Assembly: GCF_006345805.1 (NCBI RefSeq) | Contig: NC_042997.1 | Coordinates: 56,916,001 to 56,980,000 of the forward strand | Length of the DNA: 64,000 nt | From: Octopus sinensis | Taxonomy: Eukaryota | Direction: 5' to 3' | Shown here: positions 487 through 60,620 of the stretch, piece by piece | Position numbering within the stretch: the stretch's first letter is position 1 | Layout of the letters: every line of letters begins with the position of its first letter | Translations under genes and position numbers: made by a program | Notes under the pieces: generated by a model | Database searches by the model: none | Told to the model about the DNA's origin: nothing | The model's input: only the letters and a program-made list of their open reading frames with translations

Positions 487-2631
487 CTAGGTCACGCTCG
501 CAAGAGGATTTCTTGATATCAGTGTTGTGGAGGGAGTATGTGAACGCAGGGTTTTTTTCCCAAAATGCATGGTGGTACACTTGTCCACAGCTAGTTTCAG
601 TTGCCAGTCTGTGATCCATTGCTGCATTGTGTCTAGGTCTGATTGCAGGAAAGAGTTGTAGACATCAGGATCTGTCCTCTTGATTTCAAGGTACAGCTTG
701 ATGTCGTCTGCATATTTCAATACTGTGGCATTCTTTAAATTGGCATCTATGTCGTTAATGTATGCCACAAACAAGAGGGGACCAAGGACAGATCCCTGTG
801 GTACACCCGATGACATCTCATATGGTGTAGAGTGCTGTCCTAGAACTGTGACTACCTCCTTCGGCTGAGGATGAAGGATTTCAACCAGTTAAAAAGGTCA
901 TCCCCCACACCCATTGCAGAGAGTTTCACCATAAGCCTTTTGTGTGGCACAGAGTTGAAAGCCTTAGCAAAGTCAAGGTAGACAACATCCACCCATGAGC
1001 CACTGTCAGTAATCTGAGTAATGTCCTCAAGGAACTCGACAAGCTGGTCACTGCAGCTGGAGTTAGGGACAAATCCATATTGTGAGGGTCGGATGAGACT
1101 GTGAGAGCTCCAGAAGTTTTGCAATACAGCTAGTGAGACTGACTGGGCGATAGTTGACAGGTGATGTGCGGTCGCCCTTTTTGAACAGAGGAATGACACT
1201 GGCAGTTTTCCACTGCTCCGGAGTAGCACCATTGTTGAGACAGTACTGGAAGAAAATAGAAAGCTGGTGTAAAAGGAAGTGCCTGCCACGTTTGAGAAGC
1301 AGGTATGTAACTCCATCGAGACCAGGGGAGGCATAGTTGCGCTTATTTTGAAGGTGACGTCGCAGCATTGCAGGTGTAAATTCCATAGTTGTTATGGAGT
1401 TTGCTGTTAGTGATGGTGAAGATGGTACATTTTGACTTTCAACAGTGAATATGTTTGCATAGCACTCGGCAATGAGTTCTGCGCATTCCTTGGGGTCGTC
1501 AGTGATCTGATTTGTGTGAGGGTTGCGAAGAGGGCCCACTGGAGAGTGAGGTCTCTGCTTTGAGTGCACATATTTCCAGAAAACCTTGCTGTCAGGATTG
1601 GCTGCTATGCACTGTTCAAATTCAAGCACTGCTTTTTTTGTCACTTGCTTGAGATGGTTGGAGGATTTATTCCGCTTCTTCCTGTTGGTGTCTGATTTAT
1701 GCAACCTGTATTCCCGTTCAGCAGTCCGACGTTCCCTCCTGGCAAGTCGGACCGCTGAAGTTTCCCAAATTGCCCTTTTGGGGCGGTTCTTCTTTTTTTG
1801 TTTACGTGGCACTGATGCTGCACATGCTGCCCATATTGAGTCCAGGATACTCTGGAGTATAGTATTCACATCTCCAGAGTTGTAGAATTCACGCCAGTTT
1901 GGGTGCTGTAGTTCAGTGTGGTACAGGTTCCAATCTGCTCTCTTCCAATCGAAGGAAGCAGATTGGATATGGTTCAGGTTTTTGTTGCCCGCAAGAGCCA
2001 GATTGGCGATGATCATAGCATGATCAGAGTCACCTAGAGGTTCCTCCATAGTGCAATTGATAACTGCTTCAGGAGTTGTGGTGAAGAGCAGGTCCAAGGT
2101 ATTGTCGCCTCTTGTTGGAGAGGTGACTACTTGTGACCAGTTTGAGTCCAGCACAAGCTCAACAAAATCGTTTGCACTCTGTGGCCAATGGAAGGTCTCC
2201 CAATCGATCTCAGGATGATTGAAATCGCCTGCAATAAACACATAAGTGGCTGTTTTCCTGGCAGCAGCTCGGAGGACATTGCAAAGCTGTGTGTCCCGAT
2301 GGTAACTTGGGGGACGATAAACAACGCCAAGCAGGAGTGTTGACATGGTCATACGCACGTCACAGAAAAAAATTTCTTCTTGTGATTCGTTCAAATCGGC
2401 ACAAAGAATTACCAAAAAATTTGAACGAACGTAGACCATCACACCACCACCACGGCGGTTAGTGCGGTCCTTACAGAAGAGGTTGTACCCCGTAATGTTG
2501 AAAACCCCATCACAGAGTAAGGAATGCGCCCATGTTTCCGTGACAGTGATGAAGTCAGGGTCAACACTTCTGACGTAGGCGTTGAACAAATGCATTTTGT
2601 TGCATAAACTGCGAGCATTTAAGGACAACAA
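487..2631 (-). pseudogene. LINE ORF2 (endonuclease + reverse transcriptase), interrupted by frameshifts near ~1150, ~855 and ~490
   Basis: ORF track segments 1063-2631, 852-1334 and 487-816 are consecutive parts of one APE-RT protein. The frameshifts could be real or sequencing indels. Confidence 0.9.
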
Positions 2632-2687
2632 TTTGTACCCTGCTCGCAGTTTATGATGGTGTGTAGAGGATGGCAGGTTGTTCTGGC

Positions 2688-3457
2688 TTAGTTTCCCTGA
2701 GTTGCTGTAGTCTTTTTAGTTATTGTGGGTAGAGAGCACTCAGACCAGCTGGTATCTCTCTTCCACGTTTCAGCAGTCTTGACAAATCTCCAGATTTGTC
2801 CATCTTCCCGAAGACTGAAGCTTTCCTGTAGAGCTGAGTTCCTATTCAGGGAAGCCACTACACGTAGCTTCGGACGTACATCGGACGGTAAGCCCGGGCA
2901 TGTTCGGAAGGTGGTCCGATTTTCCCGCCCAGCTTTAACTGAGGCCAGATGGTAAGAGGTTGCCTCAGTGGGGTCCGTAAAAGACAACTTGATGAGCCTA
3001 GGTTTTGGGCCAGGTCGTCCAAGGCGGATAGCACCTGTTGGGGGAACGCAGCCTAGGTCTTTGGCTGAGTTGGCAGCAAAAGCCTGAAGATCAGCCATGT
3101 CTTCTGGCACCCCAATGGCAATGACTTCATGGGTGGCAGAATCCGCGGTCTTAAATGCGACAAGAGGTACAGGTACAGGGAGGTTCTTTAGCAGAGCATT
3201 CCGATAAGACCCCTCATTGTGGAGTCCAACCTGAATGGTTGCTTTTATTCCTGCTACTTCCCCTTTTAAAGCACAGATCGATTGTTGCAGTTCTGCAAGA
3301 ACTGCACTGGTCAATTGGTGTTGTTGTTGCTGCTGTTGCTCTAGTTGTGGTTGATTTTGTTGTTGATGTTGTTGCTGCTGCTCTGGTTGTGGTTGATTTT
3401 GTTGTTGCTGCTGCTCTGGTTGTGGTTGATTTTGTTGTTGCTGCTGCTGCTGCTCTA

Positions 3458-5592: not shown

Positions 5593-5729
5593 CAGAGATG
5601 TACTTGCATAGCAAGTGACCTGTTCTGAGATCGTGTGCTGAAGCAAAAACAACTGCAGCATGGAAGGTGTTTATAAATCATTTAAAATCACACAAAACCC
5701 ATTAGATCCACTTCAACATTTATATTTGA

Positions 5730-5780
5730 TTTGTCAAAATATTTTCGTTGCTTTGAGACTGTGACCTGTTCACTGACAAA
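5730..5780 (-). ncRNA. Minimal type-I hammerhead-like motif, G3-C8 core variant
   Basis: UUUGUCA-GUGAACA-G-GUCAC(AGUCUCAAA)GCAAC-GAA-AAUAUU-U-UGACAAA: 7-bp stem I and palindromic stem III. The stem II mismatches are explicable as CpG decay. Confidence 0.6.
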
Positions 5781-5802
5781 ATTCTGTGCTGCAGCATGGA
5801 AT

Positions 5803-5853
5803 TTTGTCAGTGAACAGGTCACGTTCTCAAAGCAATGAAAATATTTTGACAAA
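5803..5853 (+). ncRNA. Second copy of the G3-C8 hammerhead-like motif (other palindrome arm)
   Basis: TTTGTCA GTGAACA G GTCAC..GCAAT GAA AATATT T TGACAAA. Confidence 0.5.
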
Positions 5854-6829
5854 TCAAATATAAATATTGAAGTGGATCAAATGGTTTTTGCGTTTTTTTG
5901 AATGACTTATAAACATCTTCCTTGCTGCAATTGTGGATATATATATATATATTATATATATATATATATATATATTTGAAAAAATGAGTAGCGATGGCTT
6001 TTTTTGGGATAATTTTTATTTTAATAATGTTTACAGTAGGTAACTCATAGTAACTCACTGTAAACATGATTATTAATATAAAAATTATCCTCAAAAAGCC
6101 ACCTGTACTAATTTTTTTCAAATATAGTATACTGTAGCAAGAACTTTCTTTTTATTAATCTACTATATATATGATGATGATGATGATCATCATCATCATC
6201 ATCATCATCATCATTGTTTAACATCCATTGTCCAATGCTGGCATGGGTTGGATGGTTTGACCAGGGCTGGCAAGCTGGAAAGCTGCACTAGACTCCAGTC
6301 TGATTTAGCATGGTTTCTGCAGCTGGATGCCCTTCCTAACACCAACCACAATGAAAGTGTAATGGGTGTTTTACATGCCACTGGCACGGGGGCCATTTGC
6401 ATGACACCAGTACCTACCACAACAATGACAACCACTCCAAGAGTGTAATGGATGTATTTACGTCCTACCAGCATGGGTGCCATTTTTGTGACACCGATAT
6501 CTGCCATGACTGTGGTTTTACTTGGTTAGATGGGTCATCTCAAGCATGACATAATGCCAAAGGTCTCAGTCATTACCTCCATGCTGCCCAACACTTGAAA
6601 GGAACTTTTCCCCTGGATAATAGAGGCAATCTACTACCTCTAACTTACCCCTCTGGCAGTTGATGGAGTCTATTTTCTGTACATTTTTGGTGTTTATTGA
6701 ATTTTCTCTGTTAACCTTTCTCTGATATTGCTGTAATTCTTATGTATTCATAGCTTATATCAGGTACATCCTATGGAGTTTCTACCTATGCCTTTTCTAC
6801 AGATTTAGCAGGGCCATCTACCTGAAAGG

Positions 6830-7394: not shown

Positions 7395-7592
7395 GGCCCG
7401 AAATTTTTGGGGAAGTGGGCCAGTTGATTAGATTGACCCCAGTATGCAGATGGTACTCATTTTATCCACATCAAAAGGATGAAAGGCAAAGTCGACCTCA
7501 GTGGAATTTGAACTCAGAACGTAAAGACAGACGAAATAACACTAAGCATTTCGCCCGGCATGCTAACGTTTCTGCCAGCTTGCCGCCTTTAA
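7395..7592 (-). mobile_element. tRNA-derived SINE (family 2)
   Basis: The minus strand starts aaggcggcaagctggcagaaacgttagca (A-box-like), has a gagttcaaattc B-box, then ggtcgactttgcctttcatcc. Related copies lie at 59940-60133, 57836-57946, 21865-22020 and 57484-57587. Confidence 0.8.
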
Positions 7593-13665: not shown

Positions 13666-15976
13666 TATGTATATATATTTTGGAGGTGCAACATCAGTGT
13701 ACATGTACAGCAAAGTACAAATGCACTACGAGAAAAATTAGTCATAAGAGGAATTAGATGTAGTATGCAAGAAAAAAGACTGTGCTAGTATGGTCATGTG
13801 ATGTGTGTAGATGAGGACAGCTATATAGAGAAATGTTAGTCACTTAAAGTGGATGGCACTTGTGAAAAGTGGGAAAACCAGGAAGAATGTGGTACCAAGT
13901 TGTGAAGGCTAATCTTAAGATGTTAAACCTCAAAAGACCAAGTAAACTGACAATTTGCTGTAATCAAGAAGGCATATTAATCATAAAGAGAATGAGGTCC
14001 TAAAAGTATAAGGTTTATGATTACACATGCTAGGTCCTGCACCTGTACCCAATTTACCTCCATTAAGCATTTCCCCACATCCCGTCTTCCTCACACCCAT
14101 TCTTCCGTCACTCTTCTAACTATGGTACTAGTCAGCATCAGAATCAGCACATATCTCATCCTTCTTTTTTTGTTACCAGTGACTCCTTCACCTCCTGGAA
14201 CTATTTCCTTCACCATCCATCCCTCATTATCATTATCATCCATAAGCAAAACCATATACACATACACAAAACGCACATACAAAAAACACAAAGACACACA
14301 CACACATACAGATACAGATGAAAATGCATGCGCAGATAAAGATACACACCAAAAAAAGAAAGAATAGACTAAACAGAACAGGAGACACATGGGATAGAGA
14401 GTTGGGGAAGAGGTCACAGGATCTGTGATGAAAGATTTTCAGACAAAGGACAGTAAAATAAGAGCAATAATAAATTTGAAGTGATGAACAAATATATAGT
14501 GTGTATGTTTATTTGGCAAAAAAGTAAAAAAAAGAAATGACCATCCCAAAATACAACAATATCTGTTTCAACACATGATTTCATATCAGGAATCTTACAA
14601 AACAAATACATAAACGTAACATCCTCAGACTATTTTACCCCAATTGCCTCCTTTCTGTGCCTTCGGTTATCTCTCTCTCTCCTCTGAGCTACATCTTAGG
14701 TTTGCCATACCTTCTTTATTACTTCTCATATCTGAAATCATTCTCAACATTCAAACCAACTTTACCTTTGATCTCTATCTCTATCACTTACATCTTCTAC
14801 CACTTCCACACCTTGTACATCTTCTCCCTACTCTCCGATGTATCAACAGGTTTATGATACAGTAGGTTTCTTCACCTTCCTGTGCTGTCACTTGTCACCT
14901 CCTCCTTTTTGAGCCACTTCTATCCATAACTTAGGTAGTGGGTAGCGATTTTCTTCACTACTTCAGGGAGTGGACGACCCTGCATGACATGTGTCCCAGG
15001 CTCAGCTGGCTCTGGCTGACAGTACCCAGTATGGGCCCCTATCCAGGGTTACAGAAATGAGACAACCTTCAAAGAAATCCGGAATGGAGCCCCATAGGCA
15101 GTTTAGTGTTTGACTCAGCACTCTTCTGGCAGCTCCTGCAACCAAGCTGGTACCAAACGTAATGCTCTGCACTCCTTTGGACTACATCAGCAAGGTCGAA
15201 AGACGAATCCTGACGATTGGGTTACCCAGGATTTTCTTACATCTAGCCCAGGCCTGCGCAAAACTGGAGAGGACATGAAATGTAAAAACCAAACTGGATT
15301 AGTTTATGCACAACTCCATTGTCTCCCGAGACAAAAGGATGCCAACAACTATCCATAACACCTTCCCCACATCCAATACTGATGTTTATCCTTAACCACA
15401 CCTCCACCTTTGTTCATTACTCAATACATTCACCTATATACCCCATCTTATACTACCTGTCATTCTCCTCTCATAGTCTTATGAAATTACCACTTCTCCT
15501 TCCCATCCATATCCTCACTTATGATTATCTTCTTATACCTTGAGAAGTTGCTCAGGCACCTCATCATCACCCTTATCTTCTTTCCTGCTATTTACACTCA
15601 CCCTCATATAATGTGGGATAGCTGTGCTTTTCCTCTATAGCAAGACACCTCTGCTCAACTCCCTATCAACTTTAACCTTTCAACATCTGGCATAACACCA
15701 TCTCTCCCTCTTAAATACATTCTTACTCAGTCCAGGGAGCTTTTACCTTTATTTTTCTTACATGTTACTTGGTGAACTCACTAATATTGGTATCACAAGA
15801 AAAAAAAACAAAAACAAAAACACAACCAGTGCACACTGTAAAGTGATTAGCATAAGGAAGTGCATCGAACCTTAGAAATCATGCAAAGACACTTTGGAAC
15901 TCTTGTGTTGAGATGCTGTCAAACCATTTAACCTATCCAATGATGGAAAACAGATGTTAAAATGATGATGATGACG

Positions 15977-21478: not shown

Positions 21479-22402
21479 AAATATTTGTTTCATGAAACAA
21501 CAAAATGGAAGAAAGTAAATAAGCAAAGTAACAATTTAAGTATTTATATAGTGAAAATATAGTTCAACTGAAAATTTTGCTTTTGTAAAATTGTTTCCCC
21601 TTGCACCATAATCAGAGTATTAGTTAAACAGAATTATTTTTATGTGAGGGTGCATGGCTTTGTGGTTAGGGTGTTGCACTCATGATTGCATGATTGCGGT
21701 TTGAATTACTGGCCATGTGGTATGTTGTGATCAAAACACTACATCTCACATTGCTCCGCAATCAACTTGACATCTGATGTGTGGCACACAGCACACCTGA
21801 TCAGGCAAAACTAATTTGATAAAGGTAATGAGCTAATGTACAACACAAACATTTGATCACCAAATTCCACGGAGGTCGACTTGGCCTTTCATCCTTTCGG
21901 GGGTCGATTAAATAAGTATCAGTTATGCACTGGGGTCGATATAATCAACTTAATCCATTTGTCTGTCCATGTTTGTCCCCTCTGTGTGTAGCCCCTTGTG
22001 GGCAGTAAAGAAATAAGAATAAACAAATTATTTGTGCAAGTTATTCAGCAAGAAATTGCAAACCTGTCTTTTTATGGACTATGAGAGATTACCATCATAA
22101 GAGACTACTGGCTGATTGCTGAGCAACGTGAGATGTAGTGTTTTGATCAAGATCACAAAATACCACATGGCCAGTAATTCAAACCACAATCTTGCAATCA
22201 TGAGTGCAACACCCTAACCACAATTCCATGCACCCTGACATAAAAATAATTCTGTTTAACTAATACCCTGACAATGGAGTGGGGAGAAAATTTTACAAAA
22301 GTTAAATTTTCAGTTGAACTATATTTTCACTATATAAATACTCAAATTGTTGCTTTGCTTGTTTACTTTCTTCTATTTTGTTGATTCACGAAACAAATAT
22401 TT
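21479..22402. repeat. Inverted duplication: arms 21479-21763 and 22114-22402
   Basis: The arms are reverse complements over ~285 bp, including unique flank and a SINE head. Confidence 0.9.
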
Positions 22403-23529: not shown

Positions 23530-24210
23530 CTTTTTGCATGAAGTATACCATAATTTCAATTCTCCTCCTACTCCTACTCAACATACACACACACACGCAC
23601 GCACACGCACGCATGCACACACACACACTCATACACACATGATGCAAAGGAAGATAAAAAAATAAAATCTAAGGAGACTAGTAGAGGTCTACATCTGCAA
23701 AAACTATATTCGTTTTGCAACTGAAAACAAAGAAAAGCCTTCTATCAGACATCCAAAGAATGTCACAGTCTGAAAAACCATAAACTCTTCCCCAACCCTC
23801 TGCAATGGCACAGGAATTTAAGAAATTTTTACACTTTACCAACATATATATATATATACACATACATACATATATATATATCATCATCATCATCGTCATT
23901 GTTTAACATCCGTTTTCCATGCTAGCATGGGCTGGACAGTTCAAGCAGGGTCTGGGAAGAGTTTATGGTATTTCAGACTGTGACATTCTTTGGGTGTCTG
24001 ATAGAAGGCTTTTCTTTGTTTTCAGTTACAAAACGAATATAGTTTTTGTAGATGTAGACCTCTACTAGTCTCCTTAGATTTTATTTTTTTATCTTCCTTT
24101 GCATCATGTGTGTATGAGTGTGTGTGTGCATGCATGCGTGCATGTGTGTGTGTATGTGTTGAGTAGGAGTAGGAGGAGAATTGAAGTTATGGTATACTTC
24201 ATGCAAAAAG
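23530..24210. repeat. Inverted duplication: arms 23530-23792 and 23953-24210
   Basis: Reverse-complement match over ~260 bp including a (CA)n tract. Confidence 0.9.
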
Positions 24211-36979: not shown

Positions 36980-38640
36980 AATTCATTCTTGTGTCACCCC
37001 ATATTAGTTCCTGCTGAGTAAACTCATGGTATATAGGTCAAACAGTAAAGTACAACGTACTGCCTGACTACTGTTTTTGACATATTCCTCTGTCAACTTG
37101 ACAGCTGCACTACATATACTGAGATGTATTGGGTCATCCCATAAATGATGCAGTTTTTTTTTACTTCTTTTATTTTTCAAAATTGAGATAAACAAAGTTC
37201 TTTTTTAATCTAAAATATACTCTCCTTCATTTTCTACAATGCTCTTCCATCTCTCTGGTAGACTTGCAAGGCCCCTCTTCTAAAATTCACCAGTCTGTGA
37301 CAAAAAATACTCCTCCAGTACTGTTCTGACCTAGTCTACAGAATTCATATTTTCTCCATCCAAATGGTTTTGAAGACTGTGGAATAAATGATAATCAGAT
37401 GGGACAATGTCCAGCAAATATGGTGGATGGGGCATCATTTCCCATTCAAACTGCTCCAGCCTTTCAAATGTCATGCTCGCTGTATGTGGCTGAGCATTAT
37501 CCTGATGGAAGAACACCTTGCACCTTGAAACCAAAGATGGTCGTTTCATTTCTAGCACTGACTTAAGCTGCTTGAGCTGCTCACAGTAGGTCCCCTTTGT
37601 TATCATTTAGTTTGGGTTTAAAAGTTCAAAGTGGACTAACCCTTTCATACCTTACAAAACAGATAACAACACCTTACGTAAGTGAAAACTTTCTTTAGTC
37701 TGGGGTGCCAGTGTTTCTCCTTTCCCTAACCACTGTCTTCAGCACTTGACATTTTTATAGAGAACCCACTTCTCGTCACCAGTCACTATTCGGTTCAAAA
37801 AAGGTTTATTCGTGAGATGTGACAGCAAAAAAATCACACATTCATTCTCTGCATGCGATTAGACTTGGAAAGTTTGTAAGGAACCCATTGACCCATTTTA
37901 CTGACTTTTGCAATTGCATGCAGGTGTTGATGAATGGTTGAATGACCAAATTCAAGCTTCTCTGCTAGTTCCTCAATACTTACGATGGGATTTTGTTCCA
38001 CCAGACTTTGCAGGACGTCCTCATCAAGAGCTACAGATCTTCCAGGATGAGGCTTGTCTTCTAGACTGTAGTTTCTGGTTCAGAATTTCTGGAACTACCA
38101 TTGACACTGGCTTACACTTATTGTTTGATCCCTATATACTACATTAATATTCCTTGCACTCTCCATTGCGTTATTGCCTTTATTGAACTCATAAAGCAAA
38201 ATATGCTGAATATGCTCCTTTGTCACTTCCATTATAGCTTTGAAAAAATAACTGTTAAAATCGAACTGCACTCTTCAAGACTTGCACTAAGAATAAGGAC
38301 AGGGTAAAATTACTACCTGCTTTTATAGCAAGTTGATGCAGGTAGTAAACTACCTGCATCAACTACCAGATAGATGGAAGATCATTGTAGAAAATGAAGG
38401 AGAGTATATTTTAGATTTTAAAAAAAACTTTGTTTATTTTAATTTTGAAAAATAAAAGAAGTAAAAAACCCACATTATTTATGGGGTGACCCAATACATC
38501 TCAGAATATGTAGTGCAGTTGTCAAGTTGGCAAAGGAATATATCAAAAATAGTAGACAGTCAGTAGGTTGTACTTTACTATTTGACCTATATACCATGAG
38601 TTTACTCAGTCAGAACTAATATGGTGTGACACAAGAATAA
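36980..38640. repeat. Inverted duplication: arms ~36980-37265 and ~38360-38640 (mariner 3' end + ~150 bp flank)
   Basis: The reverse-complement match continues well outside the TIR into flanking DNA. Confidence 0.85.
37127..38345 (-). mobile_element. Mariner (Tc1/mariner, DD34D-type) transposon relic
   Basis: TIR TATTGGGTCATCCCATAAAT at 37127. Transposase motifs HQDNAQPH and HPPYLLDIVPSDYHLF are in ORF 37331-37606. Confidence 0.9.
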
Positions 38641-38719
38641 ATTTGAAGTGATTTTGACATCATCAATGAACTAAAAGCTTGATGTTTAAAACTGATAATG
38701 TGTCAATTTTCAAAAACAA

Positions 38720-50340: not shown

Positions 50341-50589
50341 AAGGAAAAAAATAAAATATATATATATATATACAACACACACACATTTATATATATATAT
50401 ATATATTATATATATATAAAATTAGAAAGAACCACCTTTTATCAATTCAAAATGAACAATTAAATTACACCATCTAGAAAATTACATATAATAGAAATAT
50501 TAAACCGTATATAATTATATACGTTTTTATTATTTTTTTGCAATTTACTTAATCATTGGTATTTTATTGTTATTTTAATTTTAATATTT

Positions 50590-53500
50590 CTAACCTTCCC
50601 GGGCGAAGAATGCACCCCACAACATAGACTGGTAGTTAGTGACTTTAGGATCAGGACTAAGAGGGCGACTAGAAGACGACCAACATGGAGAAGAAGGGTC
50701 TGGAAGCTTAAAGACCCTGCGAATGGACAGAGATTTAGAGATATGTTACTTGAAGCCTTTGACGAAGTGGAAGGGGGTATAGCTACACATGGGGTAGAAG
50801 ACAACTGGACGTTTCTGAGGGACAACCTGCTGAAAGCCGCTGACCAGATCTGTGGCTGGTGCAAAGTCCCCTTAAGACCCAAAATAACATGGTGGTGGAA
50901 CAATATTGTTGATAGGGCTATTAGACAAAAGAAACAGGCTTGGAAGGCCTGGAGAACGGTGGTAGCAGGAAGTGTATCAGACTGCCAGAAGGGAAGCTAG
51001 GAGACAGGTCTATCTAGCCAGAGGGGAAGCAGATAAAAGAAAATTTGCCAATGTCCTGCGCCGTGAGGATGAAAGACTTGAGGTATTTCGTGTTGCAAGA
51101 CAGTGTGTGAAAGAGAATCGAGATGTGGTAGGAGAGAAATGTGTTCGCATGGAGGATGGTTCACTTGCGTTAAATGAGGATGCAAAGAGAGAAGCTTGGA
51201 GACGCCACTATGAAAGGTTGCTGAATGAGGAAATGAATGGGATAAAGAGAGTCTGCCAAATGTTGACCCAACAGGGACCAGCTATCCGAGTTGATAGTTC
51301 CGTGGTAGCTAAGGCAATTAGAAGCATGAAGACAGGGAAAGCCCCAGGCCCATCAGGAATTACTGCAGAGATGCTCAAAATATCTGGTAGTGTCGGCTAT
51401 AGCATAGTCACCCGTATAGTTAACCAGGTGATACACGAAGGAGTCATACCCAATGACTGGTGTAGCAGCATAATAGTCAACTGCTACAAAGGTAAAGGCG
51501 ATGCCCTAGATACAAATAACTACAGGGGCATCAAGCTGTTGGATCAGGTAATGAAGGTTACGGAGAGGGTTATAGCCCAGTTATTAGAGAGAGAGTTAGC
51601 TTAGATGATATGCAGTTTGGGTTCGTGCCAGGGAAAAGTACTACTGATGCTATATTCCTGGTAAGACAGCTGCAGGAGAAATACCTAGCCAAAGGTAAGC
51701 CCTTGTACCTGGCTTTTGTTGACTTAGAGAAAGCCTTTGACAGGGTCCCCCGATCCCTTATCTGGTGGTCAATGAGGAAACTAGGATAGATGAATGGTTA
51801 GTGAGAGCTGTGCGAGCCATGTACAGAGACGCAGCCAGTAAGGTGAGGGTTGGCAACGAGTACAGTGAAGAATTCCGGGTAGAGGTTGGGGTCCACCAAG
51901 GTTCAGTCCTCAGCCCCCTCCTATTTATCATAGTCCTCCAGGCAATAACGGAAGAATTTAAGACAGGATGCCCCTGGGAGCTCCTATATGCTGATGACCT
52001 TGCTCTAATTGCTGAGTCACTATCAGAACTGGAGGAGAAGTTTCAGGTGTGGAAACAAGGATTAGAATCGAAGGGCCTTAGAATCAACCTAGCCAAAACC
52101 AAAGTCCTAATAAGTAGGAAGGTGGACCAACCACAAACGACTTCAGGTAGATGGCCCTGCTCGATCTGTAAAAAAGGTGTAGGTAGAAACTCTATAAGGT
52201 GCACCAAGTGTAAGCTATGGACACATAAGAGGTGCAGCAATGTCAAAGGAAGGCTAACTAAGAAAATAGTTTTTGTCTGTGGCAGATGCTCAGGAGAAAT
52301 AAACACTGGAAATTGCAGAGTCCAACTTCTACCACGTTCCAGGGAGACAAACTAGAAGTAGTTGATAGCTTCCGCTACCTAGGAGACCAAGTCAGTAGCG
52401 GGGGTGGGTGTGCTGAAAGTGTAACTGCTAGAGTAAGAATAGCCTGGGCAAAGTTTAGAGAGCTCTTACCCCTGCTGGTGACAAAAGGTCTCTCGCTAAG
52501 AGTAAAAGGCAGACTATATGATGCGTGTGTACGTACAGCCATGCTACATGGTAGTGAAACATGGGCCGTGACAGCTGAGGATATGCGTAAGCTTGCAAGA
52601 AATGAAGCCAGTATGCTCCGATGGATGTGTAATGTCAGTGTTCATAATCGTCAGAGTGTAAGTACTTTGAGAGAAAAGTTGAACCTAAGAAGTGTCAGTT
52701 GTGGTGTGCAAGAGAGACGGCTGCGCTGGTATGGTCATGTGACGAGAATGGCTGAAGATAGTTGTGTGCAAAAGTGCTACAACCTAGCAGTTGAGGGAAC
52801 CTGTGGAAGAGGTAGACCCAGGAAAACCTGGGACGAGGTGGTGAAGCACGACCTTCGAACTTTAGGTCTCACCAAGGAAATGACTGAAGACCGAGTCCTA
52901 TGGAAGTGTGCTGTGCATGAGAGGACCCGGCAGACTAGTCAGGCCATATCCCGTGGCCCCTACCTGGGACGTAGTCGATCCACCTGTGCATACCTTCCTT
53001 CTTGTGACACTTGTGAAGACCTGCTGAGGCAAGTGAAAATCAATCAAAATAGATGAACATCAATGGAATTTGTATCTTTGTGGTACCAGTGCCTGTGGCA
53101 CACAAGAAAACCATCCGAACGTGGCCGTAGCCAGTACCGCATCGACTGGCCTCCGTGCTGTGGGAACATGGTGGCACATAAAAACACCATCCGAAGACCC
53201 GCAAGACTAGTCAGGTCATAACCCGTGGGCCCTACCTGGGACGTAGTCAGTCCACCTGTACATACCTTCCGACTTGTGAAGACCTGCTGAGGCAAGTGAA
53301 AATCAAATCAAATCAAAACAAATCAAAATAGATGAACATCAATGGAATTTGTATCCTTGTGGTACCAGTGCCAGTGGCACACAAGAATCCATCCGAACGT
53401 GGCCGTAGTCAGTACCGCTTGTGGTACCAGTGCCGGTGGCACACAAGAATCCATCCGAACGTGGCCGTAGTCAGTACCGCTTGTGGTACCAGTGCCGGTG

Positions 53501-55472
53501 GCACACAAGAATCCATCCGAACGTGGCCGTAGTCAGTACCGCATCACTGGCCATCGTGCTGTGGGCACATAACAAACACCATCCGTCGTGGCCGTTCGCC
53601 AGCCTCATCTAGCACCTGTGTCGGTGGCACATAAAAAGTAGTCAGTACCGCTTGTGGTACCAGTGCCGGTGGCACACAAGAATCCATCCGAACATCGCCG
53701 TAGTCAGTACCGCATCACTGGCCATCGTGCTGTGGGCACATAACAAACACCATCCGGTCGTGGCCGTTCGCCAGCCTCATCTAGCACCTGTGTCGGTGGC
53801 ACATAAAAACACCTTCCGAAGACCGAAGACCCGGCAAGACTAGTCAGGCCATAAACCATGGCCCCTACCTGGGACGTAGTCAGTCCACCTGTGCATACCT
53901 TCCTCCTTGTGATACTTGTGAAGGCCTGTTGAGGCAAGTGAAAATCAAAGGCCTGTTGAGGCAAGTGAAAATCAAATCAAAATCAAATCAAAACAAATCA
54001 AAATGGATGAACATCAATGGAATTTGTATCTTTGTGGTACCAGTGCCGGTGGCACACAAGAGAAAACCATCCGAAAGTGGCCGTAGCCAGTACCGCATCG
54101 ACTGGCCTCCGTTCTGTGGGCACATGACAAACACCATCCGATCGTGGCCGTTCGCCAGCCTCATCTAGCACCTGTGTCGGTGGCACATAAAAACACCATC
54201 CGAAGACCCGCAAGACTAGTCAGGCCATAACCATGGCCCCTACCTGGGACGTAGTCAGTCCACCTGTGCATACCTTCCTTCTTGTGACACTTGTGAAGAC
54301 CTGTTGAGGCAAGTGAAAATCAAATCAAATCAAAATAGATGAACATCAATGGAATCTGTATCTTTGTGGTACCAGTGCCGGTGGCACACACTTTGTGGTA
54401 CCAGTGCCGGTGGCACACATGAGAACCATCCGAACGTGGCCGTAGCCAGTTCCGCATCGACCGGCCTCCGTGCTGTGGGCACGTAACAAACACCATCCGA
54501 TCATGGCCGTTCGCCAGCCTCATCTGGCACCTGTGTCGGTGGCACATAAAAACACCTTCCGAAGACCCGGCAAGACTAGTCAGTCCACCTGTGCATACCT
54601 TCCTTCTTGTGACACTTGTGAAGACCGGTTGAGGCAAGTGAAAATCAAATCAAATCAAATCAAAATAGACAAAATAGATGAACATCAATGGAATTTGTAT
54701 CTTGTGGTACCAGTGCCTGTGGCACACAAGAATCCATCAGTGCCGTAGTCAGTGCGGTGGGCACATGACAAAACCATCCGATCGTGGCCGTTCGCCAGCC
54801 TCATCTAGCACCTGTGTCGGTGGCACATAAAAACACCATCCGAAGACCCGGCAAGACTAGTCAGGCCATAACCCATGGCCCCTACCTGGGACGTAGTCAG
54901 TCCACCTGTGCATACCTTCCTTCTTGTGACACTTGTGAAGACCTGTTGAGGCAAGTGGAAATCAAATCAAAACAAATCAAAATAGATGAACATCAATGGA
55001 ATTTGTATCTTTGTGGTACCAGTGCCGGTGGCACGTGGCACATAAGAAAACCATCCGAACGTGGCCGTAGCCAGTACCACATCGACTGGCCTCCGTGCTG
55101 TGGGCACGTAACAAGCACCATCCGATTGTGGCCGTTTGCCAGCCTCATCTGGCACCTGTGTCCGGTGGCACATAAAAACACCATCCGAGCGTGGCCGTCT
55201 GCCAGCCTCGTCTGGCACCTGTGTCGGTGGCACATAAAAACACCATCCGAGCGTGGCCGTTTGTCAGCCTCGTCTGGCACCTGTGTCGGTGGCACATAAA
55301 ATCACCCACTACACTCTCGGAGTGGTTGGCGTTAGGAAGGGCATCCAGCTGTAGAAACACTGCCAGATCTGACTGGACTGGTACAGCTTTCGGGCTCCCC
55401 AGACCCCAGTTGAACCGTCCAACCCATGCTAGCATGGAAAGCGGACGTTAAATGATGATGATGATGATGATG
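50590..55472 (+). mobile_element. 5'-truncated RTE LINE with tandemly amplified 3'UTR and (GAT)n tail
   Basis: ORFs 50743-51000, 50972-51604, 51765-52355 and 52286-53056 are closely similar to the 31.4-kb copy. Tail at 55300-55472. Confidence 0.95.
52924..55300 (+). repeat. Higher-order tandem array: six units (starts ~52924, 53196, 53828, 54205, 54564, 54845) built from ~60-bp sub-repeats
   Basis: Each unit starts gacccg(g)caagactagtcag. Sub-repeats run ccatccga.cgtggccg...ggcac.taa.aaca. Confidence 0.92.
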
Positions 55473-56138
55473 TAATTTTCTAGATGGTGTAATTTAATTG
55501 TTTATTTTGAATTGATAAAAGGTGGTTCTTTCTAATTTTTTATATATATATATTATACTGTGTGAAATTTGATTTAGTATTTCTAAATTGAATTTTTTCC
55601 CTGTAAGTTAGGATTAATATTCCCTCAAATAATTATTATATATATATAAATGGCGGTGCCCCAGCATGGCCACAGCTCATTAGCTGAAACTGGAAAAATC
55701 AAAATCAAATCATAATCAAATATATATATATATATATACATATAGTCTTCTACTCTAGCCTCAGGTCTGCCTGAGACTAGAGTAGAAGACACTTGCCAAA
55801 GTGTCATGCAGTGGAAGTGAATACAGAACTATGTGGTTGTGAAGCAAGCTTCTTCCCATACACCCACACCAGTGCTATATATACATATATGTAAAAAGCA
55901 CCCATTACACTCTTGGAGTGGTTAGCATTAGAAAGAGCATCCACCCATAGAAACCATGCCAAATCAGATTGGAAGCGGGTGTGGCTCTCCAGCTTACCAG
56001 TTTCAGTCAAACTGTCTAACCCATGCCAGCATGGAAAGTAGACACTATATGATGATGATGATATATATATATGTTGTTTTGAGATTTGCTTTGCAAGAAT
56101 CTTTATGTGAGTTTGTGTGTTGAAGCATATTTTTTTGT

Positions 56139-57303: not shown

Positions 57304-57483
57304 CAGACAGAGTAGTCACCATATTTCATTCCATATTGATTACCTCCAATGAGCACAGGGTTACAATGATCAGATTGTTACCTAACACTCCATTGAATCC
57401 CTAGTGTGAAACCGATTGATAAGATCGGCCGTAATGGATATATGATACTGTACGCTTCGGATAGCATATCCACTCTACTGATA

Positions 57484-57587
57484 AATTAAGTACCAGTTAC
57501 GCACTGGGGTCGATGTAATCGAATTAATTCGTGTGTCTGTCCTTGTTTGTCCCCTCTATGTTTAGCCCTTTGTGGGTAATAAAGAAA
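57484..57587 (+). mobile_element. 5'-truncated SINE with 19-bp target-site duplication
   Basis: CATATCCACTCTACTGATA at 57465-57483 and 57588-57606. Confidence 0.9.
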
Positions 57588-57989
57588 CATATCCACTCTA
57601 CTGATAGATATATGAATGTATATTCATATACCCAGATACAATAATAAAGATAATTAATAGCACTTTTAATATAGGTTATTACCACTTGGAACTCGCAAGT
57701 CACTTCTTTCTTGGATTGTCTCTGATCCAGCAGATCAATAATCAAAGACATTCAAACCATAACTACCCCGTTTTTTTTTTTTTTAATTCAAATCTCCTTT
57801 CAAATAATTTGTGTTCTTCCAATATTTCTATGGATTAAGGTGGTAAGCTGGCAGAATCGTTAGCACACCAGACAAAATGCTTACCAGCATTTCGTCTGTC
57901 TTTACATTCTGAGTTCAAGTTCCACCCAGGCTGACTTTACATTTCAATTAAGTCCTGACTTATGGACTCTTAGGCCACACATACACACA

Positions 57990-58434
57990 CGTGCACGTTT
58001 ATGAATTTGTTTTGCACGATTCCTGATGAGAAATCGTGTGCTGAAACAGATATTGTTATATTTCAGGATGGTTGGGGGGTTTACTCTCTCTCTTTTATTT
58101 GGCAAAGAAAAAAAAAATGACCGTTCCAAAATATAACATACTCATACACACAAGCACGTGCGCGCATACACACATTTGTTTTTTAAAAAATTGACGATAA
58201 AGTAAGCAGAAAAGGAGAGAACCAGATATTGGTGACACGCGACCTGACAAACACGCAGCTCCACCTGATAAACACACATATATATATAGGCTTCACTAGT
58301 GATAGCTGTTACTTCCAACATTTGCTCGCTGTACTACTAATCTCGGTTTGTTTTCATCCAAGTACATAAGATCGCCTGACACCGGTTTACATTACATTAA
58401 TAATTTCTTGTTTGTGGACAGCAGTGATCGCACG
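57990..58434 (+). promoter_or_regulatory. Probable promoter / 5'UTR (local CpG enrichment)
   Basis: CpGs are frequent here but depleted in most of the window. The region lies directly upstream of the signal-peptide exon. Confidence 0.5.
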
Positions 58435-58525
58435 ATGGCAGCTTCTGCTAGAACTCTGTTGGAGCTTCTTTTACTCTTGATTCTTACTATAACATTTACT
58501 ATTTCTATAAATCCAGTCATTTTGG
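58435..58525 (+). CDS. First coding exon of a secreted or membrane protein (signal peptide MAASARTLLELLLLLILTITFTISINPVIL-G)
   Basis: ATG in gcacgATGg context, basic residue followed by a hydrophobic core, and a strong donor G|GTAAGA in phase 1, as is typical of signal-peptide exons. No downstream exon was identified. Confidence 0.7.
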
Positions 58526-59076
58526 GTAAGAAAATTTAACTATTGTCTACCATGATAAATTGTCCCATTTTAATGTTGCTTCTTCGAGTTTTAAAACTTT
58601 TCAGAAATCTCAAACACGAATTTCTCGATTTGTCCCTCTCTTCTGCCCTTTATAATTAATTACATTTCCATCCTGTATATTTTAAAATTTTCCTTATTAA
58701 TTCAATATATCAATGCAACAAAGCGATTTTTACTCTTTCGTTCGTTGCATGTTTCTCTAATCAGTCGTTAGTATATGCAGCATCAGTGCTCTTAGAATAT
58801 TGAATAATTCCTTCTTTTAGACAATAGTTTGTTTATATAATTAACTGAATTTCAAAGTTGTGAAAGCGTTGAAATATTGTCATGAAAAGCCATTACATTT
58901 CGACTTTGTAATATTCTAATCCAGTTTGAAATATTATTCTAATTCTTAGCAATTATAAAGCTACATTTAATTAGAGCCACACGACACTTAATCACAGTTA
59001 ATTAACATGTTTTAGCTATGGACGTATTTAATCTGAAAGTTGATCCTCATTTCTGACATAATCTCTACTGTCCCCA

Positions 59077-59315
59077 ACCTAGAGAACTACGTTAATTCAT
59101 TATTTTTATAGAGATGTCCCAAAGTGACACTGACCGTTTTGCATTAAATCACAGAAAAACATTGTTCTCTGTGAGAATTTCCACTGTCAATTGACTAACA
59201 TTCATCCTTGCACTTAAAACTACAAGCTAACATGGGTCATTAAACTACAAGCTATTTCCCCTTTCAAATCACACCATTTGCTATAAAAATAATGAATTAA
59301 CGTAGTTCTCTAGGT
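59077..59315. mobile_element. MITE-like element with perfect 35-bp terminal inverted repeats
   Basis: ACCTAGAGAACTACGTTAATTCATTATTTTTATAG at 59077-59111 and its reverse complement at 59281-59315. Confidence 0.8.
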
Positions 59316-59939
59316 ACCCATAAAAAGATGGTGACGGTAGGAATGGCTTACATCACGCCGTTGTATAGCCCCTAGGGGACTAAACAATAATCGTACTGAT
59401 CGAATATTTCTTTTTTCTGCTTTTTCATATTTTTTCATAGTTCAGATTTGAAAGGAGAAAAATTATTACATAAAACTTACATGATAGTAATGTTAAGTTG
59501 TACACACCTACAGCACACAGTTAATCCACAAATAAAGTATGTGGTGCGTGCACGTATATAACTGGATATGAATTTTACAAAACTGAACATTAATCATATT
59601 GTGTATTGAGTATTTTGTTTTAGCATCGGATCTTTTCCTTTTGAACGGCACTTTGTAACATAATTTCTAGCCGTTCAAAAGATCCTTAGCATCTAAAATA
59701 AAAGATTTTCAAAATGCTGTTATTATATTTTAGTTGCAACGTATTAAGATAGGATAGTCATGGACGGAATGTCTTTGATAATAGGTTTGCTGGATGGGAG
59801 CTGACCAGGGGGCTAAGCAATAATAACTAACGACAAATATATTGTGTATATAGGAGTGTGTGTGTTAGTATGTACCCTACATTCCAACATGGGTCCAACT
59901 TTCTTAACATGAATCCGTAGAAATATTGGTTTCATATTT

Positions 59940-60133
59940 TGGCGCAAGGCCAGCAATTTCGGGAGTGGGGCAAGTCAATTACATCGACCCATTATTCATT
60001 TTATCGACCCCAAAAAGGATGAAATGTAAAGTCAGCCTGGGTGGAACTTGAACTCAGAATGTAAAGACAGACGAAATGCTGGTAAGCATTTTGTCTGGTG
60101 TGCTAACGATTCTGCCAGCTTACCACCTTAATC
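59940..60133 (-). mobile_element. SINE family 2, full head and body
   Basis: Same consensus as 7395-7592. Confidence 0.85.
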
Positions 60134-60399
60134 CATAGAAATATTGGAAGAACACAAATTATTTGAAAGGAGATTTGAATTTAAAAACAAAAAAAAAAGG
60201 GGGTAGTTATGGTTTGAATGTCTTTGATTATTGATCTGCTGGATCAGAGACAATCCAAGAAAGAAGTGACTTGCGAGTTCCAAGTGGTAATAACCTATAT
60301 TAAAAGTGCTATTAATTATCTTTATTATTGTATCTGTGTAGAAAATATATGAAAGAAGTAGTTGGATCTAATAGAGATTATAGAGAAATTGAAAAAAAA

Positions 60400-60620
60400 A
60401 AAAAAATGAAATATCTTGTTCAACATTTTATACAAGTCTTTGACATTTTCTCTCAGTTCAAGAGACTGCAATTTGAGTTTATTTAAGTCTGGCATTTTGG
60501 ATGCAAGAGATATACCTCTAATTTTCATCAGAAATACTGTTTCTCAACTTGTTTAGTCTATTTATACTTTGAAAATAAGATGGGTTCCAAATTTCAGTTG
60601 CATACTCTAATTTTGAAAAA
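60400..60620 (-). mobile_element. Old CR1-type LINE C-terminal relic
   Basis: LNKLKLQSLELRENVKDLYKMLN resembles the L..L.L.SLE.RR..DL..YK motif. Confidence 0.5.

What the first reader, a model, noticed from the sequence alone, without database searches (positions are those of the whole stretch)
57633..60336. Promoter and signal-peptide first exon enclosed by a very recent 314-bp inverted duplication
Seen: near-identical inverted arms flank a 2073-bp segment containing the CpG-rich region and exon 58435-58525. The SINE in the right arm continues intact into the spacer, while its copy in the left arm is cut exactly at 57946, so the left inner junction is new. Inference: this is the pattern a staggered-break inversion leaves. 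In that model the exon originally pointed leftwards on the minus strand, and its gene body could lie to the left. The arms could also allow repeat-mediated flipping (an orientation polymorphism of a promoter/first exon). Alternatives are a simple inverted copy insertion or an assembly artefact.
Basis: partly seen in the sequence, partly recalled or inferred. Interest (0 to 1): 0.7.

Follow-up and report, generated by a model that had tools for sequence, protein, structure and literature searches.

The report
Young inverted copy beside a putative promoter
A 314-base stretch of repeat-derived DNA was very recently copied and pasted backwards 2 kb upstream, so it now brackets a CpG-rich, promoter-like segment of an animal genome; this is an ordinary young structural mutation, and the bracketed segment was most likely never inverted.

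Summary
Arms 57633-57946 and 60020-60336 are reverse complements, with exact runs of 137 and 162 bp. Every difference lies in one T/A homopolymer tract. They enclose 2,073 bp.

The right arm is the source. Its inner edge lies inside a 200-bp SINE-like insert (59930-60129) that has 18-bp target-site duplications on both sides. New here: its outer edge lies inside a 208-bp poly-A-ended unit (60199-60406). That unit shares a 49-nt head and its length with the neighbouring unit.

So both junctions of the right copy look ancestral and both junctions of the left copy are new. A staggered-break inversion would leave each copy one old and one new junction. The best reading is therefore an inverted copy-and-paste duplication, joined without a target duplication and with at most 3 nt of microhomology. 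The enclosed segment keeps its original orientation.

The enclosed segment is the CpG-richest part of the window (66 CpG in 2.9 kb; flanks have observed/expected about 0.1). It carries a TATA-like box, an ATG in good context, a signal-peptide-like 31 codons and a GTAAGA donor. No protein, domain or transcript evidence supports the exon.

Assembly error and flipping between the arms remain untested. This is ordinary, of low to moderate interest.

The parts
57633..57946 (+). Left arm: the derived, inverted copy (314 nt). It reads reverse complement of the first 138 nt of unit E2, then the poly-T tract, then the reverse complement of the last 50 nt of unit E1, then one SINE target-repeat copy, then the first 110 nt of the SINE. 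Both ends cut elements that are whole on the right.
60020..60336 (-). Right arm: the source copy (317 nt), continuous with its surroundings on both sides.
   Evidence: SINE plus target repeats; unit E2
57947..60019 (.). Enclosed 2,073-bp segment. It has no other copy in the window apart from small repeat fragments.
59930..60129 (-). SINE-like 200-bp insert, intact. Related copies lie at 7454-7589 (81%) and 21861-21913 (79%). No tRNA signal was found by ARAGORN or Rfam.
59912..59929 (+). Left target-site duplication of the SINE (AATCCGTAGAAATATTGG).
60130..60147 (+). Right target-site duplication of the SINE (AATCCATAGAAATATTGG), inside the right arm. It is copied into the left arm at 57819-57836.
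59752..60198 (+). Unit E1: 229 bp once the SINE and one target-repeat copy are removed (59752-59929 plus 60148-60198). It ends in A5CA10.
   Evidence: (D2)
60199..60406 (+). Unit E2: 208 bp, with the same 49-nt head as E1 (78%), ending in A15. It spans the outer end of the right arm at 60336/60337.
57413..60274 (.). CpG-undepleted domain (66 CpG) in a strongly CpG-depleted background. It starts about 220 bp left of the left arm and ends inside the right arm.
58279..58289 (+). TATA-like TATATATATAG, about 150 bp upstream of the ATG (read by eye).
58435..58525 (+). Candidate first coding exon: ATG with A at -3 and G at +4, peptide MAASARTLLELLLLLILTITFTISINPVILG, then a G|GTAAGA donor in phase 1. 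There is no upstream ATG in the 145 nt before it.

Best explanation
This is a very recent inverted dispersed (copy-and-paste) duplication in a repeat-rich animal genome.

What happened: the 314-317-bp stretch 60020-60336 was copied and inserted in reverse orientation between 57632 and 57947, 2,073 bp upstream. That stretch is made only of old retroposon pieces: the first 110 nt of a SINE, one of its target repeats, the tail and poly-A of unit E1, and the first 138 nt of unit E2. The segment between the copies was not inverted, so the promoter-like region and the candidate exon keep their original rightward orientation.

Shown: the right copy sits in ancestral context on both sides, and the left copy cuts both elements.

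Inferred: the copy arose during repair of a DNA break upstream of the promoter-like region. The route was either capture of a copied fragment by end joining or a two-step template switch. The reasons are that the joints are blunt (at most 3 nt of microhomology at the outer joint, none at the inner one), and there is no target-site duplication and no poly-A at either end of the copy.

The enclosed region is probably an unmethylated promoter with a first exon, about even odds. The duplication itself probably has no function.
For: Arms: two exact runs of 137 and 162 bp, with every difference inside one homopolymer tract.

Right inner junction is ancestral: it lies inside a 200-bp SINE bounded by an 18-bp target duplication matching at 17 of 18 positions.

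Right outer junction is ancestral:
- E2 (60199-60406) begins directly after E1's poly-A.
- It shares E1's head. The 18-mer core occurs only at 57736(-), 59767 and 60216, against 0.59 matches (at up to 3 mismatches) expected by chance.
- It ends in A15. Only 4 runs of A10 or longer and 2 of A12 or longer exist on the + strand in 64 kb. A chance run at the right distance is therefore about 0.003-0.01 likely (my estimate).
- Unit lengths are 229 and 208 bp. Whole-unit alignment gives z=8.7, and after the head z=2.9 with 4 of 500 shuffles as good.
- Block identity rises again to 25/40 and 29/40 across and beyond the arm end.

The continuation that the inversion model predicts shows no similarity to E1 (z=-0.7) and no poly-A.

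The staggered-break model leaves each copy one old and one new junction (Ranz 2007, PMC1885836).

There is no direct repeat flanking the left arm.

Promoter reading: CpG observed/expected is 0.9-1.0 at 58.0-59.0 kb, the highest in the window. This is the only signal-peptide-like ATG ORF with a donor in 128 kb of both strands. There is no upstream ATG. In octopus, methylation marks gene bodies and spares promoters (PMC9476566). That comparison applies only if the window is cephalopod, which I did not verify.
Against: - E2 as a single unit rests on one relative (E1), a poly-A tract and weak body similarity. The tail without poly-A is not significant on its own (z=1.3-1.4). TRF does not call the pair. 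No further copies were found in the window or in the three public DNA collections.
- No outgroup, second haplotype or reads could be examined, so the empty site was never seen and an assembly error is not excluded.
- Inversion followed by re-inversion between the arms gives the same final structure.
- The repair mechanism is inferred from joint anatomy only.
- The exon has no homologue. No database protein shares even three 5-residue words with it. There were no hits for 38 translated stretches of the locus and no Pfam domain downstream.
Confidence: 0.62

Rival explanations
1. Staggered-break inversion. Single-strand breaks 314 bp apart at one breakpoint, plus a second break, inverted the 2-kb segment and duplicated the staggered stretch. 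The exon would originally have pointed left.
For: The topology of inverted copies flanking a segment fits. So does the size: in Drosophila yakuba such duplications have a median of 321 bp and a range from 46 bp to 1.9 kb, and 12 of 18 inversions carry a duplication at only one breakpoint (PMC1885836). The blunt joints fit end joining.
Against: It requires the right outer junction (60336/60337) to be new, yet that junction lies inside unit E2, which has a matching head, length and A15 tail. The predicted original continuation into the reverse complement of 57632 and leftwards has no poly-A and no similarity to E1.
Confidence: 0.07
2. Inversion followed by re-inversion. A staggered-break inversion was flipped back by recombination between the arms, giving the same end state as copy-and-paste.
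For: It is topologically identical to what is seen. Inversions between inverted repeats recur often in humans (11 of 16 tested, PMC3961182).
Against: It needs two rare events within a time too short for a single substitution outside the homopolymer tract. The 314-bp arms are short for efficient recombination (my knowledge).
Confidence: 0.04
3. Assembly artefact. The left arm, or its orientation, was produced by the assembler or by a chimeric read and does not exist in the animal.
For: The arms are identical except in a homopolymer tract, which is where long-read consensus errors concentrate. No independent sequence of the locus could be found.
Against: Fold-back artefacts usually give adjacent palindromes, not a 314-bp copy 2 kb away with a unique, non-palindromic spacer (my knowledge). 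The window has no gaps (N count 0). Both novel joints are clean.
Confidence: 0.1
4. Mobile element with long terminal inverted repeats. The stretch 57631-60338 is a DNA transposon or foldback element, its CpG richness reflects youth, and TA is the target duplication.
For: The window holds other long-inverted-repeat elements: mariner 36980-38643, and foldbacks at 23530-24210 and 21479-22402. A TA dinucleotide can be read on both sides.
Against: The arms are a mosaic of three older retroposon pieces and cut two of them. The CpG-rich domain extends 220 bp beyond the left arm. There is no second copy and no transposase domain in the translated stretches tested, and the termini are unlike the window's mariner. 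A TA at both sides of AT-rich DNA is not significant.
Confidence: 0.04
5. Older duplication kept identical by gene conversion between the arms. This is the same structure, but not recent.
For: Inverted repeats this close can convert each other (my knowledge). The differences are restricted to a slippage-prone tract.
Against: Identity is perfect up to the last base at the inner edge and up to 57633 at the outer edge, where conversion tracts should fail and mismatches should accumulate.
Confidence: 0.1

Closest known systems
Inverted dispersed duplication / templated insertion at a repaired break (a structural-variant class known from human population and cancer genomes; my knowledge)
   Same: One copy sits in ancestral context. 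The other is inserted nearby in reverse orientation, with blunt or microhomology joints and no target-site duplication.
   Different: No empty-site allele has been seen here. At 314 bp the copy is longer than typical polymerase-theta templated insertions. It landed 370-680 bp upstream of a putative transcription start.
Inverted duplications at inversion breakpoints from staggered breaks (Ranz et al. 2007, PMC1885836)
   Same: Inverted copies of formerly unique local sequence flank a segment. The copy length matches the reported median of 321 bp.
   Different: In that model each copy keeps one ancestral junction. Here the right copy appears to keep both. The enclosed segment is 2 kb rather than a chromosomal segment.
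Inversions that recur between inverted repeats (Aguado et al. 2014, PMC3961182)
   Same: Near-identical inverted arms bracket a short segment, which is the substrate for flipping.
   Different: Only one orientation is seen in one assembly. The arms are much shorter than the repeats studied there.
DNA transposons and foldback elements with long terminal inverted repeats
   Same: Long, near-identical inverted termini. Such elements are present elsewhere in the same window.
   Different: There is no significant target duplication, no other copy and no transposase. The arms are built from truncated older retroposons.

Membership tests
Staggered-break inversion with breakpoint duplication | Inverted copies of local sequence flank the rearranged segment | tested here: met
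Staggered-break inversion with breakpoint duplication | Each copy keeps exactly one ancestral junction: one the outer, the other the inner | tested here: not met
   The right copy's inner junction lies inside a SINE with target repeats. Its outer junction lies inside poly-A-ended unit E2. The second point is moderately strong, not proof.
Staggered-break inversion with breakpoint duplication | An outgroup or allele shows the segment in the opposite orientation | not testable with these tools
   No related genome could be reached.
Inverted dispersed (insertional) duplication | The source copy is continuous with ancestral sequence on both sides | tested here: met
Inverted dispersed (insertional) duplication | The derived copy has two novel junctions that cut elements intact at the source | tested here: met
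   The SINE is cut at 57946 and E2 is cut at 57633.
Inverted dispersed (insertional) duplication | An empty insertion site exists in an allele or relative | not testable with these tools
   The joined flanks have no counterpart in the window, and no external genome was available.
DNA transposon / foldback element with terminal inverted repeats | Target-site duplication flanking the termini | tested here: inconclusive
   Only a possible TA, which is expected by chance in AT-rich flanks.
DNA transposon / foldback element with terminal inverted repeats | Several copies, or a transposase | tested here: not met
   No other copy in 64 kb. Pfam found nothing in the + strand stretches from 58526 to 60349; the rest of the unit and its minus strand were not scanned. 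A genome-wide copy number was not testable.
Unmethylated promoter with signal-peptide first exon | CpG-undepleted island in a depleted background | tested here: met
   (a sequence proxy only; methylation was not measured)
Unmethylated promoter with signal-peptide first exon | ATG context, hydrophobic core, splice donor, no upstream ATG | tested here: met
   The scan criteria were set after seeing the ORF.
Unmethylated promoter with signal-peptide first exon | Transcript, splice junction, or a protein that contains the peptide | tested here: not met
   No protein shares three 5-residue words with it. It is unknown whether this species' gene models are in that database. RNA data were not available.
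Invertible segment (recombination between inverted repeats) | Both orientations exist in a population or in tissues | not testable with these tools
   Only one assembly is available.

The most novel reading that the evidence does not exclude
The two perfect 314-bp arms make the promoter-plus-first-exon segment a flip-flop cassette that recombination inverts in some individuals or cells, switching the exon on and off. Alternatively, when both arms are read through in a host transcript, they pair into a 314-bp double-stranded RNA stem that is edited or diced.
Probability: 0.06. Interest if true: 0.6.

Novelty: new member of a known kind. Interest (0 to 1): 0.25.

Why it matters
By itself, little: small inverted duplications are a known class of structural mutation.

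It is a clean worked example of a method. Nested retroposons (a SINE with its target repeats, and a poly-A-ended unit) can polarise a rearrangement without any outgroup. They can also separate "inverted copy inserted" from "segment inverted".

If the enclosed region is a real promoter, a fresh 314-bp perfect inverted repeat now sits 370-680 bp upstream of its start site and again 1.5 kb downstream. That makes the locus a candidate for instability, orientation polymorphism or hairpin RNA, and these are testable in populations.

Tried and rejected
**Searches for an independent copy of the locus**
- Exact-product look-ups of six ORFs across the locus and elsewhere in the window found nothing.
- A search with 38 concatenated stop-free translations of 57.4-60.9 kb scored 2,501 candidates, none significant.
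- Exact DNA scans for the exon and for the E-unit head in metagenome, prokaryote-genome and viral collections gave 0 hits.

**Organism**
- A LINE ORF search gave only unnamed metagenome relatives (81% amino-acid identity, 75% DNA identity).
- SINE strings are not printed in any held paper.
- My impression that this is a cephalopod rests on memory only.

**Exon 2 or a host gene**
- Pfam on + strand stretches right of the exon, on - strand stretches from 35.3 kb to about 47.7 kb, and on 20 further long stretches gave only LINE and mariner domains.
- The - strand stretches from about 47.7 to 57.6 kb were prepared but not scanned.

**RNA**
- Rfam found nothing at gathering thresholds. Near the locus there were only microsatellite look-alikes.
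- The CTGATGAG...GAAAC motif at about 58023-58050 is not a hammerhead ribozyme.
- ARAGORN found no tRNA, so I do not call the SINE tRNA-derived.

**Other checks**
- Transposon reading: the arm termini are unlike the window's mariner.
- Empty-site joints and inversion-model joints have no counterpart in the window.
- TRF does not detect E1/E2 as a tandem repeat.
- The CpG landscape does not discriminate between the two models.

Full report
**Context**

The window is eukaryotic and dense with transposable elements.
- LINE-like ORFs carry endonuclease, reverse-transcriptase and PHD domains at 1-3.7 kb, 31.6-34 kb, 42.4 kb and 50.5-53 kb, plus an antisense copy near 47 kb.
- A mariner-like element with a Mos1 HTH domain and long inverted termini lies at 36980-38643.
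- There are several foldback-like pairs.
- No tRNA or Rfam family is present.
- The short retroposons remind me of cephalopod SINEs, but nothing I ran names the organism.

Yes.
- The arms are 57633-57946 and 60020-60336, with 2,073 bp between them.
- They contain exact reverse-complement runs of 137 and 162 bp. Every difference (one substitution and three indel bases) lies in the homopolymer tract 57770-57784 / 60182-60199.
- Nothing else in the window comes close. Other inverted pairs with long arms are 79-97% complementary.
- Other copies of the SINE family are 79-81% identical. The arms are therefore a local duplication, not two independent repeat insertions.

**Which copy is the original?**

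The right copy is the original. The SINE-like insert occupies 59930-60129 on the minus strand. It is bounded by an 18-bp target-site duplication, AATCCGTAGAAATATTGG at 59912-59929 and AATCCATAGAAATATTGG at 60130-60147. The right arm starts at 60020, in the middle of this intact insert, so the right inner junction is ancestral. The left arm carries the A-variant of the target repeat and the first 110 nt of the SINE, then breaks off at 57946.

**The new piece of evidence: the right outer junction**

- A 49-nt motif at 60201-60249 recurs at 59752-59800 with 78% identity (family D2). Its 18-nt core occurs only at these places and in the left arm.
- With the SINE and one target repeat removed, two adjacent units appear. 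E1 is 59752-59929 plus 60148-60198 (229 bp) and ends in A5CA10. E2 is 60199-60406 (208 bp) and ends in A15.
- Runs of A10 or longer are rare on this strand: four in 64 kb, of which these are two. A15 is the longest.
- The units align as wholes (z=8.7). They still align after the head is removed (z=2.9; 4 of 500 shuffles as good).
- Block identity is 29/40 and 24/40 in the head. It falls to chance level in the middle. It rises again to 25/40 across the arm end and 29/40 up to the tail.
- The tail without poly-A is not significant on its own.
- I estimate the chance of an unrelated long A run falling at the homologous distance at 0.003-0.01.

E2 therefore most likely is one old poly-A-ended unit, and the end of the right arm (60336/60337) falls inside it.

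**Consequence for the models**

A staggered-break inversion leaves each copy with one ancestral and one new junction (PMC1885836). Here the right copy has two ancestral junctions and the left copy has two new ones, each cutting an element that is whole on the right. That is the signature of an inverted copy inserted at a distance.

Under the inversion model E2 would have continued into the reverse complement of 57632 and leftwards. That sequence has no poly-A and no similarity to E1.

An inversion that later flipped back by recombination between the arms would look the same. It needs two events in a very short time. Either way, the enclosed segment is in its original orientation, so the gene body, if there is one, should lie to the right and not to the left.

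**How the copy was made (inferred)**

- The left arm has no flanking direct repeat and no poly-A at either end, so it was not retroposed.
- The inner joint is blunt. The outer joint has three matching bases (TAC) separated from the copy by one mismatch.
- This fits end joining of a captured or copied fragment at a break, or a two-step template switch.
- The clustering of all differences in the homopolymer tract fits error-prone copying, slippage or consensus error. I cannot tell which.

**The enclosed segment**

- CpG dinucleotides are dense from 57413 to 60274 (66 in 2,862 bp). Observed/expected reaches 0.9-1.0 at 58-59 kb, the highest in the window and above the young LINE bodies at 0.66-0.73.
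- The flanks have observed/expected about 0.1.
- In Octopus bimaculoides, methylation marks the bodies of a subset of genes and spares promoters and most transposons (PMC9476566). If this animal behaves likewise, the pattern is an unmethylated island inside or between methylated gene bodies.
- The island holds a TATA-like box (58279-58289), 145 nt without any ATG, and an ATG with A at -3 and G at +4. It also holds 31 codons with a basic residue followed by a long hydrophobic core, and a G|GTAAGA donor.
- A scan of both strands for such ORFs, with criteria I set after seeing this one, returns only this ORF.

Against the exon:
- No database protein shares even three 5-residue words with it.
- No Pfam domain lies in + strand stretches to the right, or in the - strand stretches scanned on the left (35.3 kb to about 47.7 kb).
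- Only 3.6 kb of sequence remains on the right.

I put the exon at about even odds.

The CpG domain extends about 220 bp beyond the left arm and ends within the right arm. It is therefore not simply the footprint of a mobile element bounded by the arms.

**Alternatives kept open**

- Assembly artefact: no reads were available. The structure is not the usual fold-back palindrome, and the window has no gaps.
- Transposon with long inverted termini: disfavoured by the mosaic, truncated content of the arms and by the lack of copies, transposase and a significant target duplication.
- Older duplication homogenised by gene conversion: disfavoured by perfect identity up to both edges.

**Verdict**

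The promoter and exon reading is plausible but unproven. This is an ordinary young structural variant. Its possible effects, namely flipping between the arms (such inversions recur in humans, PMC3961182) or a 314-bp RNA stem, are speculative.

No step had to be referred.

Noticed in passing
window 59077-59111 and 59281-59315: A second, nested, perfect inverted repeat lies inside the enclosed segment: 35-bp arms with a 169-bp loop. It has no other copy in the window and no clear target duplication. It could be a tiny mobile element or another small inverted duplication at the same locus.
   Followed up: partly
window 50400-50487 and 55470-55557: An 88-90-bp inverted repeat (94-95% identical) brackets a roughly 5-kb LINE-like element (RT plus PHD ORFs) with tandem repeats. 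This is the same topology as the finding, but older.
   Followed up: no
window 57465-57609: A roughly 100-bp SINE fragment (57487-57587, 85% identical to 21906-22013) is flanked by a 19-22-bp direct repeat CATATCCACTCTACTGATA, just left of the left arm. A 22-bp near-palindrome (57609-57630) abuts the arm.
   Followed up: partly
window 57995-58138 versus 14508-14617: A repeat is shared with 14540-14617 (87%, opposite strand). The adjacent 35-45 bp is inverted in place between the two copies, which is a micro-inversion between repeat copies.
   Followed up: no
window 23530-24210, 21479-22402, 5649-5934: Foldback-like structures with arms of 140-270 bp at 89-97% identity and short or absent loops. 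Long inverted repeats are common in this genome.
   Followed up: no
window 36980-38643: A mariner-like element on the minus strand with a Mos1-type HTH domain, transposase fragments broken by stops, and long inverted termini (77-89% identical).
   Followed up: partly
window 1-64000: CpG observed/expected is 0.31 overall and 0.05-0.25 in most 1-kb bins (some old-repeat bins reach 0.3-0.46). It reaches 0.59-0.73 in LINE bodies and one other bin, and 0.7-0.95 at 58-60 kb. This suggests the whole window lies in historically methylated DNA, perhaps a very long gene body. No host exon was recognised.
   Followed up: partly
L001 (ENA ERZ27277065, contig k141_21517): A metagenome assembly contig carries a LINE ORF 81% identical in protein (75% in DNA over 2.6 kb) to the window's element at 723-3261. 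This looks like DNA of a related animal inside a metagenome.
   Followed up: partly
window 53076-54833: Tandem and dispersed direct repeats (63-172 bp, 94-99% identical) lie downstream of the LINE ORFs. The minus-strand translations repeat a motif resembling FDFHLPQQVFTS.
   Followed up: no
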